Assembly (NCBI GenBank): GCA_904063045.1
Contig: CAJFCJ010000005.1
Coordinates: 945,988 to 1,009,987, forward strand
Length of the DNA stretch: 64,000 nucleotides
Direction: 5' to 3'
Origin: Dimorphilus gyrociliatus
Taxonomy: Eukaryota > Animalia > Annelida
Shown here one piece after another: positions 11,701 to 17,113 of this stretch. Numbering within the stretch: the stretch's first letter is position 1; every line of letters starts with the position of its first letter. The translations under genes and the position numbers were made by a program. Under the pieces are notes generated by a model that worked only from the letters and a program-made list of their open reading frames with translations, was not told where the DNA came from and ran no database searches.

Positions 11701-14159
11701 ACAAAACGTTATTATCCCGATTCCACATGGAAGGAAATCTGTAATAAGATTCTAATAGATAAATGACAGTATATACCTAATTAAGCTGTCGTATAGATTA
11801 TAATTATCTAGCTTCTCTATTCTATCTATATAGAAATCTATATTTAAAAAATGGCGGTAAACACTTTTCACTTTATATGTATAGAGTAAAGTATTACAGC
11901 AATTCGATGACAATCGAAAGCTGTTAACTAGCATTAGGTTTTTATTCAACATTGCTTTTCGTATTTCCTCTACGTAATTGAGATTTTTTAACTTGTTGCT
12001 CCACCTACAGTAGTTTTTTTCTCTTTTTTTCTTGAATATATCATTCAATTCTTTATTATTAATTTAATTTTATCAATTTTAATTTCCTCTCCTTATCCGC
12101 ATTAGCCCGATTAAGCTAATATAAGGTACAGAAGGAAAGTAAACTATAGAGAGAGAGAGAGAGAGAGAGAGATAGTAGTAAAATAATAATAAATCAGCAA
12201 TTAAAATAATATTAATCTCATATTTTATTTGGAGAAAATAGATGTTCTATACAAAATTTTCGAGAAGAGAAATGGAGAGATGTGAATATTAAAGATAAAC
12301 GTTAGATAAAAGGATACGAAAGAAAAGAAAAGTTTTTTTAGTAAGAGCATTAATAGTTATAAGGAATGTATAGGGAGATACAAGTTAATCGATTATGATA
12401 AAGATATACTTTGGAGAGAAGGAGAATTCTTTATAATTCAATGATAAAAGTGTTACTAATTTATTTATTAGGTTTTTTGGCATTCTCTACCCAAATTCCA
12501 ACTAAATTTTACCTAAATATAGATTACAGTTAAATTTTTCATAGAAACAACCGTTCACTAACTACGAGACTAAAACAATGAACTATCCATTAATGTTCAT
12601 CATAAATAATTCATCAATCTCTATTGCAAGCTCAGCACTCTAGAAATAGTTTACTAGAAATACGCCAGATGGCATGGCTTAAATAAAAATATCTTTTAAT
12701 AGGTTTGAATGGTTTGCTCTTTTAATAAGTTGCGGTTTTTTGTTTAACACTTGAACAGATTGCGATAACTATTCAAATCGTAAAAAGTCAAGAAAACTAC
12801 AACGTGATAACCGAGTAACCTCTTTGGATTATTCTGAATTATCTGATTTATCACCAGACGCTCATCAATCACCATTCGATTATACAGCAACAACACACCA
12901 ACAAGATATTTGCCGCCAATTGCCGAGAATGGGCCACGTCTACCAATCAAAGTTGGAGACAATTTACTCATGGAGTACAACAGAAAGTATAGACAGCGTA
13001 GAGCACGAATCGCTTAAGGCGGGAACCCGTTATAGAAAATTGGGCTCTTCCAATACAGCTGAACCAAAACAATCAATAATGAAATCGCTACAAAACTATT
13101 TTACTGGTTTCTTTGCCAAACCAATAAGCCAAGATACGATTAATAGAAAGGATTCCATCTCAAATATTGACCCTCCAGAAAATCCCTTTCAGAGAACTAT
13201 ACCTGTTCCCTCCCGTCCAGAGAATAACTTTAGAAGAGAATCTCTTCACACTCCCGCCGTAACTATAACAGAGCCTGTTAACCCTTCTCCCCAAGAAGTT
13301 TTTCGCAGGAATCGGTCCGTTTCTAGTCCAAGAATTATTTTTCCAGGTGCTACATCCGCCAATCCAGGAGAGCTTCAGAGGAGAGAAATATCTACTGAAA
13401 GCGTAGAAAATGCACATAAAAAGGACGCAGTGAGTCAGTTGCGATCGAAAAAGGAGCCTAACTTAGATAGCTTCCAACTACAGAAAGCGCAATCGAACGT
13501 TCAAGCGAAGAAAAATCAAACTCCCGAAAGAGAATCACAAAAGAAAAGAGATGTTTTTAGTCGAGAAGAGAGGCTAGCAATGCGCGAATATTATGAAAAT
13601 GAAATGAAAAAAGAAACGAGACATAGACGTCAAAATTTCAGGAGTGGAAGGTCGTTTAGCGTAGAAATACCACCGCCAGAAGTTCACATTATCGAATTAG
13701 ATCCTAACGATCGTCACGCAAGCAATAGGCGTCGAGCATTTTCATCCAGAAAATCAGTCAGCCTCGAAGACCCGCCAAATCGTAAAATAAGTCGAATGCC
13801 GATATTAGATATATCACCGACCGAGGCTAAGAGAGTGCCTTCACACGGTCACAGAGAACGTAGACAGCGTTTCCGATCTCAACGAAGTAGGAGTGTCGAT
13901 GGTCAATTATCACCCAACACATCACCTAGTAGACCAACTACTCTTGAATTAAAACCAGGTCAAAAACAAACAAGATCAAGAAGTAATTAAAGTTTATATA
14001 CAAAAAACACTAACTAACATAACTAATTAATTTTCACTTTTTATTAAAGATCGCCAAAATAATAGAAAATGGGATAGGAATAAAAAACTGCTTGAATTGC
14101 ATGGAAGACGAAGCCAGTCTTTGGATTTACCTGATCCTGATCACTTTAAAGAAGGTTAA
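1..14159 (+). CDS. 5'-partial multi-exon gene: helical coiled-coil (F-BAR-extension/HR1-like) region followed by a long Ser/Arg-rich disordered tail
   Basis: Phase-consistent exons: <1-323 (donor gtgagt), 3218-3561, 4091-4168, 6953-7171 (GC donor), 9068-9340, 10297-10440, 12759-13958, 14050-14159 (TAA). The first two read ...LREKKAVLEKEAFELSSYCKLNQEVISTLMTICQR/NLSNQLYSKVYETQEDLCRKRNEVRFAEIQLAVVKDQVERL. The last exon (DRQNNRKW...RRSQSLDLPDPDHFKEG*) follows a 91-nt intron containing ctaac branch-like motifs. The family assignment is uncertain. Confidence 0.8.
6695..6732 (+). other. Candidate alternative terminal exon of gene 1 (DANRSNKESRPT*)
   Basis: Good acceptor ttttcacag at 6694, phase 1 matching the 4168 donor, 12 codons to TAA, AATAAA at about 6817. 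Confidence 0.4.
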
Positions 14160-14854
14160 AAACAGTAAAGAATAAAGAAAGAAAGAAGGAAATTTTACTA
14201 AAATGTTTTTTCGATTATTGTCTTTTCTTTTATTTTGATAAGCTTGTTAAAATTCCATACAAAAAGAATAATCTATATATATATATAAAGCGTGTAGATA
14301 TATGTACAATATGTATATAATGTATATCTATACGTTTGTTTATGTATTAAAAAAAACCTTGTATTTACTACGGTATGCTGTATACTGCACATAGCTGTAC
14401 GTATAATATACATTAATTATTTGTATAAAAATTGATGTTTTATTTATATATTAGTGCGAAAAGAACAAAAAAAAGAAAGTTATAAACTTTTTTGTATAGA
14501 GAGAGAGAGAGAGAGAGAGAGAGACAAAGAGAGAGAGAGGGAAAGAAAGAAAAAGTCAGAAGCTTTGATAAAATACTTTTTGTTTTGTTTTGTTTTTTTT
14601 TCCTTTTTAATTATTTAGAAAACTTTTTTTTTTTAATAAAAAAAAGAATCAAAAATATAAAATAAATACGACGTCAAAACGAAAAAATTATCTCTTTTAG
14701 AATTTTACAAAAAGAAAAACCATTTTTTATTATCTTTTAAAGCAAGGAAGCCAATTTTTTTCGACAACAAAGAAAATCTCCGATTTCTAAATATCTAAAA
14801 CATTGAACAATTCATTAGTTTCATAGTATTATATGCTTTTTCTTTGTTTAAATA

Positions 14855-15335
14855 TTAACCACGACGATCAGCATTATAAATCAATAGGCATTGTAAGCGT
14901 TTGCTTCCAATATTCTGGACACATTCATTGTAAAGGTTCGGCCCATAGATGGCGCAATGTTCGCAAATTTCCGTTATCAAATTCCTTGGCCACAGTCCAG
15001 ATGATCTCCTGCAACATGAAACCTATGTTAGAATAGTTTTATTGTTATTATAACTATGACAAAGTACTCTTAAATTCCTCGTCTATTCTTTCCTAGACCT
15101 ATTGATATTTCCATACAAATGAATATATATAGATATAGGTAGCATTTCCAGAAAAAATCACCTTCCCTAGGTTACTAAAGGGTAAATATTATGTTCTTTG
15201 AAAAAAAAGGGTTACTCTTCGCTTAAGGAAAAATGATTAAATCACACTTGTGATCTAAATATAAATACGTATATCGTAAATGATATTCTATCAATTCTGT
15301 ATTCTAAATTGATATACAATCATAATCTTATTTCA

Positions 15336-15401
<66 letters not shown>

Positions 15402-17113
15402 ACTAACTACTTAGTTTTTCAATTTTGCAAGAAAGTTACAGAGAAAGACAAATTTGTAATTAAAACAAATTGAAAGCTGCTTGCGTTAAAAACTATGTCT
15501 GGACTTTCTTTTTGCAATTACTTTTAAAATCCAGAGCTTAAACAAAGGTCATCTGTAAGCCGAACAATAAAGTATCTTTTGAGGGATGAAGGAATGTTAG
15601 ATTATCCTTCACACAATTACTAATAATTGGTAACTCTTTGTAATATGAGAGATATTCTTAAAGACTTGTTGAAAGGAATATTCGCAAAGTGGTCCATACG
15701 ATTTTAAATTTTATTCATAGTCAACTAACTACTTTCCTACTAGTCTTACAGAGTACACGCTATCATTTTATAGTCATCTTCCCTGATACAATCTATTTTT
15801 CCTCTATAAAACGATACTATATATTGATACCCGTTATGTTATATATAATACATGATTATAGCTAAAAAAAAAAAAGAAACGCCATCTATTGTATTATGTA
15901 CTTCCGGAGTAAACTTTATGACATTCAACGGTTGAGAGAATTTATGAAAAAAGCTAAAAGCCATGGGAATAATAAAGTGTTTAATGAAAATTTATGAGTC
16001 ACTCTGGCCAGTTGGGAAATTCTTTGTTTACTAATTTTTTACTACATTATTACTAAAGGTTTTCATTAATTCACCTTGACGCTAAAACGTTAAAGGTGAG
16101 TGATTATGAACTTTTTGAACAATTAACTTTATTCGTAAAACTTGGCTTGATTATGTAATTCCGGAGGAAGTAAGCCTAGACAGGTGAGAGATGTAGTACC
16201 TTTTATATATTGAGTAAACATTCGTTTATAGACGGGCACTTGTCTCATCTTTTTATGGAAAGATAACTTTTTATATTGATTATAAACGCCAAATTGAATA
16301 AACTATTTGATTAGAAGAGAGGAGAATTAAAGTAAGAGAGAGCCTACTTAATAGAGAATGGATAGATTCGAGAAAGTACTGAATCAACGTGGTTGAAAAG
16401 TGATATACAGTATATATTAAAGATATTATAAAGCTATTTCATTTACTAAACAATAAACGGATTTAGCTATTAAAAAGTTACAAAAAGCTTTACGATTCCT
16501 TTGGGAACATTATCAGATTTTTTCGTACATGCTTTAAGACTAGGGGGGGGGGGGAAGGGAAAGAACTGCCAGGTAATTTTGCCAATGTCACTGTAATAAA
16601 TATACAATAAAGTATAAGTCAACACATAAAAATAGTTTTCCTGTTTCTTACTTTGTATCTTAAGATAATAACTAACAAACAGCTTATCTCCCATTAAATG
16701 GCATATATATTTCAAGAGATAAACTTTATTTGTCTAAATTCTATGAATAGACCTCTTTAAATAGAAATTAGAGAAGATAATAGGAAAATTTTTTGCCCTG
16801 TACAAAACTTTTTTTCATGCTTTTCCCCTCTCCTGCAAATTTTATCATTAGAGGAGAGGAAAAACAACAATTAACATTCAGTAGGCCATTAAGGCAAGAA
16901 AGTCGGAATAATTAATATTTTTCCGGTTTTAAGGAGAATGTCTGCACATTAATATATCCGAAAACCCCATCACAAAACACTAACATATATATATATGCTG
17001 TTAACAGCAATCGAATAGAAATCTTACCCATTTCTGAAATACTCTGGTGGTAAAGCAGCCGAAATTTGCAGCAGACTAACAATTAGTAAAACAATCTTGA
17101 CTTTTTCATTCAT
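14855..17113 (-). CDS. Secreted neuropeptide-like precursor, 79 aa: MNEKVKIVLLIVSLLQISAA-LPPEYFRN-GR-SSGLWPRNLITEICEHCAIYGPNLYNECVQNIGSKRLQCLLIYNADRRG*
   Basis: Coding exons 17113-17028 (ttttag|ATG ... AATGG|gtaaga) and 15008-14855 (ttgcag|G ... TAA) join in phase 2. The product has a signal peptide, a G-R amidation/cleavage site and 4 Cys. A probable 5'-UTR exon ends at 19066 (cag|gtaaga). Confidence 0.85.
15339..15401. repeat. Compound microsatellite (CT)n-(ATCT)n
   Basis: Read directly; one of many (GA)n/(TA)n tracts in the window (e.g. 8697, 12148, 14498, 31845, 50506). Confidence 0.9.

What the first reader, a model, noticed from the sequence alone, without database searches (positions are those of the whole stretch)
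14855..15008. Precursor C-terminal domain resembles a CHH/ITP/eclosion-hormone fold missing one disulfide pair
Seen: ICEHCAIYGPNLYNECVQNIGSKRLQC (C-x2-C-x10-C-x10-C). Known: CHH/ITP and EH have six Cys paired C1-C5, C2-C4, C3-C6; recalled cores are ITP ICEDCYNLFREPQLHSLCRSDC and EH CAQCKKMFGPWFEGSLC. Inference: the four Cys align with C2, C3, C4 and C6, so the two missing Cys are those that pair with each other. An internal KR between the third and fourth Cys could give a two-chain disulfide-linked product. CHH/ITP is generally regarded as ecdysozoan, so a lophotrochozoan relative would bear on the superfamily's origin. The alignment is short and could be convergent.
Basis: inference. Interest (0 to 1): 0.75.

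Follow-up and report, generated by a model that had tools for sequence, protein, structure and literature searches.

The report
CHH-like tail of annelid "sCAP" precursor
What may be new is that the literature files this gene under another name (sCAP).

Summary
The peptide and its C-x2-C-x10-C-x10-C spacing are there, on the minus strand, in exon 2 (15008..14860) of a three-exon gene.

The genome is Dimorphilus gyrociliatus. This exact 80-aa precursor is already published twice as "sCAP-like". Its Platynereis orthologue yields LPPDFFRN-amide, seen by mass spectrometry, and has the same Cys spacing.

Pfam, PDB and 1.8-billion-protein sequence searches gave no CHH, ITP or eclosion-hormone hit. 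An AlphaFold model of the one homologue found (P0007) has three helices. Its structural neighbours include three CHH/ITP-type centipede and spider toxins: kappa-Ssm1a, Ssm6a and Ta1a, at ranks 2, 4 and 9 of 48,161 chains.

Koch et al. 2023 (PMC10501145) describe "CHH DREPs", spiralian four-Cys peptides with two of the three CHH disulfides and a phase-2 intron. By eye, the window tail matches them in spacing, motifs, intron phase and position, and C-terminal dibasic site.

The verdict is a new member of a known family. The internal KR cleavage and the eclosion-hormone link are unsupported. The "sCAP" label for the annelid genes looks wrong. The scan noted this same gene once before, on this window (s1-080716).

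The parts
17028..17113 (-). Exon 1, coding part. It holds Met, a 20-residue signal peptide (17113-17054), the octapeptide LPPEYFRN (17053-17030), and the first two bases of the amidation-donor Gly codon.
   Evidence: It matches the published transcript protein. The Platynereis orthologue's LPPDFFRN-amide was seen by mass spectrometry.
15009..17027 (-). Intron 1, 2019 nt, phase 2, with GTAAGA donor and TTGCAG acceptor.
   Evidence: The junction is confirmed by the published protein reading ...FRNGRSSG.... Mollusc CHH DREP genes have the same phase and the same distance, 14 residues, to the first Cys.
14860..15008 (-). Exon 2. It holds the last base of the Gly codon, the cleavage Arg, the four-Cys domain, an RR site and the first base of the Asp codon.
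14888..14965 (-). Cysteine core, C-x2-C-x10-C-x10-C. The Cys codons are at 14965-63, 14956-54, 14923-21 and 14890-88.
   Evidence: The spacing is shared with Platynereis and Lumbricus. It is x2/x9/x10 in P0007 and x2/x11/x11 in molluscs.
14897..14902 (-). Internal Lys-Arg between the third and fourth Cys.
   Evidence: It is not conserved across the family.
14861..14866 (-). Arg-Arg seven residues after the last Cys, the likely C-terminal processing site of the domain.
   Evidence: Scallop, Octopus, Sepia and caenogastropod family members, Conus among them, have a basic cluster 6-8 residues after the last Cys; many heterobranch members and Dreissena have none.
14795..14859 (-). Intron 2, 65 nt, phase 1, running from GTTAAT to TTTTAG.
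   Evidence: It explains the published ...RRDI end. The size fits the genome's 66-bp median intron.
14787..14794 (-). Exon 3, coding part. It holds the last two bases of Asp, then Ile and the TAG stop. An AATAAA lies at 14731-14726 in the 3' UTR.

Best explanation
This is the Dimorphilus gyrociliatus member of the spiralian 'CHH DREP' peptide family (Koch et al. 2023). It is encoded by a three-exon, 80-codon gene that the literature lists as 'sCAP-like'.

Proposed processing (all steps inferred):
- The signal peptide is removed.
- Cleavage after the Gly-Arg at the exon 1/2 junction frees LPPEYFRN, which is amidated.
- The remainder, trimmed at the C-terminal Arg-Arg, is released as a separate peptide of about 46 residues.
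- That peptide folds into a small three-helix unit held by two disulfides. In exon-2 numbering these are Cys15-Cys29 and Cys18-Cys40, the counterparts of C2-C4 and C3-C6 of CHH/ITP. It acts as a secreted hormone-like ligand.

Shown: the gene model and transcript; conservation of the four Cys; the phase and position of intron 1; a homologue with two tandem copies flanked by dibasic sites.

Inferred: the cleavage pattern of the tail, the disulfide pairing, the fold, and any signalling role.
For: Gene and transcript:
- Exon-by-exon translation equals the published protein of transcript Locus_4026.0_Transcript_1.

Orthologues and homologues:
- Platynereis has LPPDFFRN-G-R followed by a C-x2-C-x10-C-x10-C tail, and the amidated octapeptide was seen by MS.
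- P0007 matches at E 3.3e-4 against 1.84 billion proteins. Pairwise BLASTP gives 4e-07 for each of its two copies. Both copies are flanked by KR/KRK.
- The predicted acceptor of the P0007 exon is also phase 2.

Match to CHH DREPs, compared by eye from the paper's supplement:
- Lumbricus has ICDAC, FYG and NEC motifs with x2/x10/x10 spacing.
- Scallop has EICESCG with x2/x11/x11 spacing, a phase-2 intron 14 residues before the first Cys, and an RRR tail. The window gene has EICEHC, a phase-2 intron 14 residues before the first Cys, and an RR tail.

Fold:
- The P0007-domain model has pLDDT 81.8 and pTM 0.62, with helices at 5-20, 23-28 and 30-45 that carry the Cys.
- Its only Foldseek PDB hit is Ssm6a (2mun, E 8.7, TM 0.46/0.49).
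- These toxins have the 1-5, 2-4, 3-6 disulfide pattern (kappa-Ssm1a, Ssm6a). Ssm6a and Ta1a are the HAND toxins placed in the CHH superfamily; kappa-Ssm1a shares Ssm6a's SLPTX3 family name.
Against: - No sequence search reaches CHH, ITP, EH or the mollusc DREPs.
- The link to the DREP family rests on alignment by eye, because the paper's sequences have no reference and were not put into tools.
- The five P0007 models range from pLDDT 82 down to 46, from a three-sequence alignment.
- AlphaFold may simply be echoing the Cys framework of toxins it was trained on.
- The window peptide's own model (pLDDT 69.7) is a two-helix hairpin with no CHH-like neighbours.
- MIH and CHH themselves are not among the 50 rows shown.
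- The aromatic core residues cited for CHH peptides are not evident in the annelid tail.
- No peptide-level evidence exists for the tail.
Confidence: 0.7

Rival explanations
1. The tail does belong with the spiralian four-Cys DREP peptides, but the likeness to ecdysozoan CHH/ITP and the derived toxins is convergence. On this reading it is a short disulfide-stapled helical peptide with no common ancestry with CHH/ITP.
For: - No profile or pairwise sequence signal to CHH/ITP.
- It has four Cys, not six.
- Cys spacing alone matches by chance about one time in three.
- Structural scores are low.
- The domain has no internal intron, whereas CHH and CHH-L diverge after residue 40.
Against: - Three CHH/ITP-type toxins sit in the top nine of 48,161 chains for a hypothesis stated in advance.
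- Koch et al. obtained overlapping neighbours, plus a prawn CHH, for Aplysia.
- The two retained disulfides would be the nested C2-C4 and C3-C6 pair.
Confidence: 0.3
2. The gene is a true sCAP (pyrokinin/neuromedin-U type) precursor, as annotated. On this reading the tail is only a diverged version of the cysteine-rich tail of mollusc sCAP precursors, serving folding or sorting and having no signalling role.
For: - It is annotated as sCAP in three papers.
- The octapeptide ends in F-R-N-amide, loosely like F-P-R-M-amide.
- Mollusc sCAP precursors also carry a Cys-rich tail.
Against: - Mollusc and nemertean sCAP tails have six Cys in a CC...C...CC...C pattern, quite unlike this one.
- The scallop has both a true sCAP and a separate CHH DREP, and the window tail resembles the DREP.
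- The Pro of the PRX-amide motif is missing.
- The Lumbricus family member has no such amidated peptide at all.
- P0007 repeats the tail, not the short peptide, between dibasic sites.
Confidence: 0.1
3. The tail is an eclosion-hormone relative rather than a CHH/ITP-type peptide.
For: - EH shares the 1-5, 2-4, 3-6 disulfide topology (established knowledge, recalled).
- EH-like peptides exist in molluscs.
- Other first-stage notes report EH-like genes elsewhere in this genome (untested).
Against: - No hit to the EH Pfam profile.
- EH spacing did not fit within 3 residues in the subset test.
- Published lophotrochozoan EHs keep six Cys.
- No EH structure appears among the structural neighbours.
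Confidence: 0.04
4. Cleavage at the internal Lys-Arg yields a two-chain, disulfide-linked product, as in insulin.
For: There is a dibasic pair between Cys3 and Cys4 in Dimorphilus, in Platynereis and in one P0007 copy.
Against: - The second P0007 copy has KQ there.
- Lumbricus and all molluscs listed have no basic pair there.
- The site lies inside a predicted helix.
Confidence: 0.05

Closest known systems
CHH DREP family (Koch et al. 2023, PMC10501145): mollusc and Lumbricus peptides mimicked by cone-snail toxins
   Same: - A signal peptide and short N-terminal propeptide ending at the exon 1/2 junction.
- A phase-2 intron 14 residues before the first Cys.
- Four Cys, at x2/x10/x10 in Lumbricus and x2/x11/x11 in molluscs.
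- [IT]-C-[ED]-x-C and YG motifs.
- A basic cluster after the last Cys.
- A predicted three-helix fold with overlapping PDB neighbours.
   Different: - Here, and in Platynereis, the N-terminal propeptide is an amidated octapeptide.
- An internal KR is present.
- Sequence searches did not connect the two, so the link was made by eye.
Platynereis dumerilii 'sCAP' precursor (Conzelmann et al. 2013, PMC3890597)
   Same: Clear orthologue. It has LPPDFFRN-G-R against LPPEYFRN-G-R, and the same C-x2-C-x10-C-x10-C tail.
   Different: Platynereis has an extra KR-bounded spacer before the domain and a longer C-terminal extension.
HAND toxins Ta1a and Ssm6a, and kappa-Ssm1a (CHH/ITP-derived arthropod venom peptides)
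   Same: - Size of about 46-51 residues and an all-helical core.
- C-x2-C at the end of the first long helix.
- Nearest PDB neighbours of the P0007-domain model.
   Different: - The toxins have six Cys and three disulfides.
- Only about 18-26% identity over the structural alignment.
- They are arthropod venom proteins, not endogenous spiralian peptides.
CHH/ITP/MIH hormones (Pfam PF01147)
   Same: A possible shared three-helix core and the C2-C4 and C3-C6 disulfides. The precursor layout of signal, short peptide, basic site, then hormone resembles type-I CHH precursors.
   Different: - No C1-C5 disulfide.
- About 46 residues rather than about 72.
- No alpha-5 helix.
- No Pfam hit.
- The aromatic core is not evident.
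Mollusc and nemertean sCAP precursors
   Same: A short amidated peptide or peptides next to the signal peptide, followed by a Cys-rich tail.
   Different: Their tail has six Cys as CC...C...CC...C. Their peptides end in P-R-x-amide.

Membership tests
CHH DREP (Koch et al. 2023) | Four Cys forming C-x2-C-x10/11-C-x10/11-C in a peptide of about 50-70 residues downstream of a signal peptide | tested here: met
   Window x2/x10/x10; Lumbricus x2/x10/x10; molluscs x2/x11/x11.
CHH DREP (Koch et al. 2023) | Phase-2 intron just upstream of the mature peptide | tested here: met
   The window's intron 1 splits the Gly codon after base 2, 14 residues before the first Cys. Scallop has the same phase and the same 14-residue distance, and Octopus and Conus have the same phase.
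CHH DREP (Koch et al. 2023) | Detectable sequence similarity to family members | tested here: inconclusive
   By eye there are about 26-28% identical positions with Lumbricus and Dreissena across the Cys core, with shared EIC-E-x-C, YG and NEC motifs. No tool alignment was run because those sequences have no reference. phmmer against 1.84 billion proteins did not list them.
CHH DREP (Koch et al. 2023) | Predicted three-helix fold with CHH-type toxins as structural neighbours | tested here: inconclusive
   Met for the homologue P0007. Not met for the window peptide's own, weaker model.
CHH superfamily (PF01147) | Six invariant Cys paired C1-C5, C2-C4, C3-C6 | tested here: not met
   Only four Cys are present. 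Their pairing was not testable.
CHH superfamily (PF01147) | Match to the family profile | tested here: not met
   No Pfam family at E up to 10 for the window tail or either P0007 copy. No CHH-family chain in PDB sequence searches.
CHH superfamily (PF01147) | [quoted passage not shown] | tested here: inconclusive
Eclosion hormone (PF04736) | Six Cys and a profile match | tested here: not met
   Four Cys; no Pfam hit; spacing does not fit within 3 residues.
sCAP / PRX-amide precursors | Peptide ending in [FY]-P-R-x-amide | tested here: not met
   The window peptide ends Y-F-R-N before Gly. Mollusc sCAPs end in PRM, PRL or PRG.
sCAP / PRX-amide precursors | Six-Cys tail, CC...C...CC...C, conserved in molluscs and nemerteans | tested here: not met
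   Read. The window tail has a different number and pattern of Cys.

The most novel reading that the evidence does not exclude
The annelid genes called 'sCAP' (Platynereis, Dimorphilus) are not sCAP orthologues. They are the annelid orthologues of the mollusc CHH DREP genes. On this reading one small precursor yields two secreted products: an amidated octapeptide, cut from the position that the precursor-related peptide occupies in type-I CHH precursors, and a two-disulfide CHH-type hormone. A true sCAP may then be missing from these annelids. A two-disulfide CHH-like peptide would also date back at least to the common ancestor of annelids and molluscs.
Probability: 0.45. Interest if true: 0.5.

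Novelty: new member of a known kind. Interest (0 to 1): 0.36.

Why it matters
- It turns a guess made by eye into a placement. The tail is a conserved peptide of a family already proposed as the spiralian branch of the CHH superfamily.
- It adds at least two annelids, Dimorphilus and Platynereis, to the one annelid sequence in that paper.
- It flags a probable misannotation that bears on which neuropeptide families annelids have. If 'annelid sCAP' is really a CHH DREP precursor, reconstructions of pyrokinin/sCAP evolution and receptor-ligand pairing in Platynereis need a second look.
- It points to a testable second product of a gene whose short peptide is already known by mass spectrometry.
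- It is not a discovery of a new kind of molecule.

Tried and rejected
Searches that gave nothing useful:
- Word-index protein search with exon 2, with P0007 and with their alignment found nothing beyond P0007 itself.
- Seven of the eight phmmer hits are long repeat proteins whose Pfam 'hits' are repeat noise.
- Pfam scans found nothing.
- PDB sequence searches gave only a zinc finger at E 0.84.
- tblastn of both exons against the window found no paralogue.
- The ESM Atlas shape search returned generic helices.
- The pdb_via second look only re-scored Ssm6a.

Other dead ends:
- The first exon of the P0007 gene was not found within 10 kb upstream, and its organism stays unidentified.
- The model of the window peptide gave saposin-like and other non-significant hits.

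- The protein-atlas search.
- The look-up of sequencing runs. Read laying therefore could not be used, and expression rests on the published transcript.

Full report
**The observation**

A TTGCAG acceptor ends at 15009.

The Cys codons sit at 14965-63, 14956-54, 14923-21 and 14890-88, which gives C-x2-C-x10-C-x10-C.

The exon ends at 14860 at a G|GTTAAT donor. A 65-nt intron follows. A third exon at 14794-14787 completes Asp and adds Ile and TAG.

**The gene**

A sibling first-stage note (s1-080716) pointed to an upstream exon. That exon runs 17113..17028 and encodes a 20-residue signal peptide, LPPEYFRN, and two bases of a Gly codon, before a GTAAGA donor. Intron 1 is therefore 2019 nt and phase 2.

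Notes by other agents named the genome as Dimorphilus gyrociliatus. The supplement of that genome paper holds exactly this 80-residue protein, from transcript Locus_4026.0_Transcript_1, labelled 'sCAP/small cardioactive peptide like' and ending ...RRDI. This confirms the organism, both junctions and transcription. The same sequence is reused in the sCAP set of Thiel et al. 2021.

The match to the published protein was read exon by exon.

**Orthologues and homologues**

The Platynereis 'sCAP' precursor reads signal, LPPDFFRN-G-R, a short spacer, then a tail with C-x2-C-x10-C-x10-C. LPPDFFRN-amide was detected there by mass spectrometry.

A phmmer search of 1.84 billion proteins gave eight hits. 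Seven are repeat-protein noise. The eighth, P0007, comes from an unidentified eukaryotic ENA assembly. It carries two tandem copies of the domain (x2/x9/x10), each flanked by KR or KRK. Its exon appears to begin after an acceptor in the same phase.

Repetition between dibasic sites suggests a released bioactive peptide rather than a spacer.

**Direct tests of the CHH/ITP/EH idea**

Sequence tests were all negative:
- No Pfam family at E up to 10 for the tail or for either P0007 copy.
- No CHH-family chain in PDB, by phmmer or by profile.
- No CHH, ITP or EH protein among the phmmer hits.

Spacing alone is weak evidence. About 32% of random four-Cys spacings fit some four-of-six subset of the CHH, EH or Ssm6a templates within two residues. 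The EH positions in that test were recalled from memory. The CHH and Ssm6a positions are confirmed.

**Structure**

The window peptide's AlphaFold model is weak, with pLDDT 69.7 and two helices. It has no informative neighbours.

The P0007-domain model is better, with pLDDT 81.8 and pTM 0.62, although the five models range from 82 down to 46. It has three helices, with two Cys on the first and one on each of the others.

- Its only Foldseek hit in PDB is the centipede toxin Ssm6a (E 8.7, TM 0.46/0.49, 26% identity).
- These toxins have the 1-5, 2-4, 3-6 disulfide pattern (kappa-Ssm1a, Ssm6a). Ssm6a and Ta1a are the HAND toxins placed in the CHH superfamily; kappa-Ssm1a shares Ssm6a's SLPTX3 family name.

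The absolute scores are low, and AlphaFold may be echoing a remembered Cys framework. Even so, three members of one tiny family in the top nine, for a hypothesis stated in advance, is not a random outcome.

**The literature already holds the answer**

Koch et al. 2023 (PMC10501145) describe 'CHH DREPs', secreted peptides of molluscs and one annelid that cone-snail toxins mimic. They report:
- two exons split by a phase-2 intron;
- that this is the first CHH-family peptide outside Ecdysozoa.

Their supplement lets the window gene be placed by eye:
- Scallop exon 2 starts 14 residues before the first Cys, as here. It reads EICESCG where the window has EICEHC, and it ends in RRR where the window has RR.
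- Lumbricus has ICDAC, FYG and NEC motifs with exactly x2/x10/x10 spacing.
- Molluscs have x2/x11/x11.

I count about 26-28% identical positions across the core. These sequences have no reference, so no tool alignment was made. That is the main weakness of the placement.

**Consequences**

It is no longer novel.
- The eclosion-hormone branch has no support. EH-like six-Cys peptides are separately known in molluscs.
- The internal KR is not conserved in the family, so a two-chain product is unlikely.
- The 'sCAP' label is doubtful. Mollusc and nemertean sCAP tails are six-Cys CC...C...CC...C. The scallop has both a true sCAP and a DREP. The octapeptide also lacks the Pro of the PRX-amide motif.
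- No paper in the searchable library links LPPDFFRN to the DREPs, and Koch's supplements do not contain the Platynereis motifs. The re-annotation therefore seems unpublished, within the limits of that library.

**Verdict**

The feature is real and is a new member of a known kind. I put about 0.7 on membership of the DREP family and separate release of the tail. I put about 0.4-0.5 on true common ancestry with ecdysozoan CHH/ITP. Interest is moderate to low.

Noticed in passing
window 15009-17027: Intron 1 of this gene is about 2 kb, in a genome whose median intron is 66 bp. It holds (CT)n and (CTAT)n microsatellites near 15340-15400. The paper notes that unusually long introns often carry open-chromatin peaks.
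   Followed up: no
L001-L004 (ENA ERZ24900295, contigs ctg5277l and ctg6672l), gene at L004:10001-10393: P0007 carries two tandem copies of the four-Cys domain between dibasic sites. It lies on two near-identical contigs, probably haplotypes, of an unidentified AT-rich eukaryote. No signal-peptide exon was found within 10 kb upstream.
   Followed up: partly
window 12824-13990 (+): A 388-codon open frame rich in Ser, Arg and Pro lies convergent to this gene and ends about 800 bp from its stop codon. Its identity was not examined.
   Followed up: no
Thiel et al. 2021 supplement: Nemertean 'sCAP' precursors were evidently recognised by the mollusc-type six-Cys tail and show no obvious PRX-amide peptide next to the signal peptide. 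The tail may be the better family marker, which makes the odd annelid tail stand out more.
   Followed up: no
same genome, other windows (notes s1-081100, s1-082069, s1-082926, s1-083064, s1-083101): First-stage notes report eclosion-hormone-like six-Cys genes elsewhere in this genome. The published Dimorphilus neuropeptide list holds no entry with that name.
   Followed up: no
window 14480-14545: A (GA)n microsatellite lies about 250-300 bp downstream of the stop codon, beyond the first AATAAA at 14731-14726.
   Followed up: no
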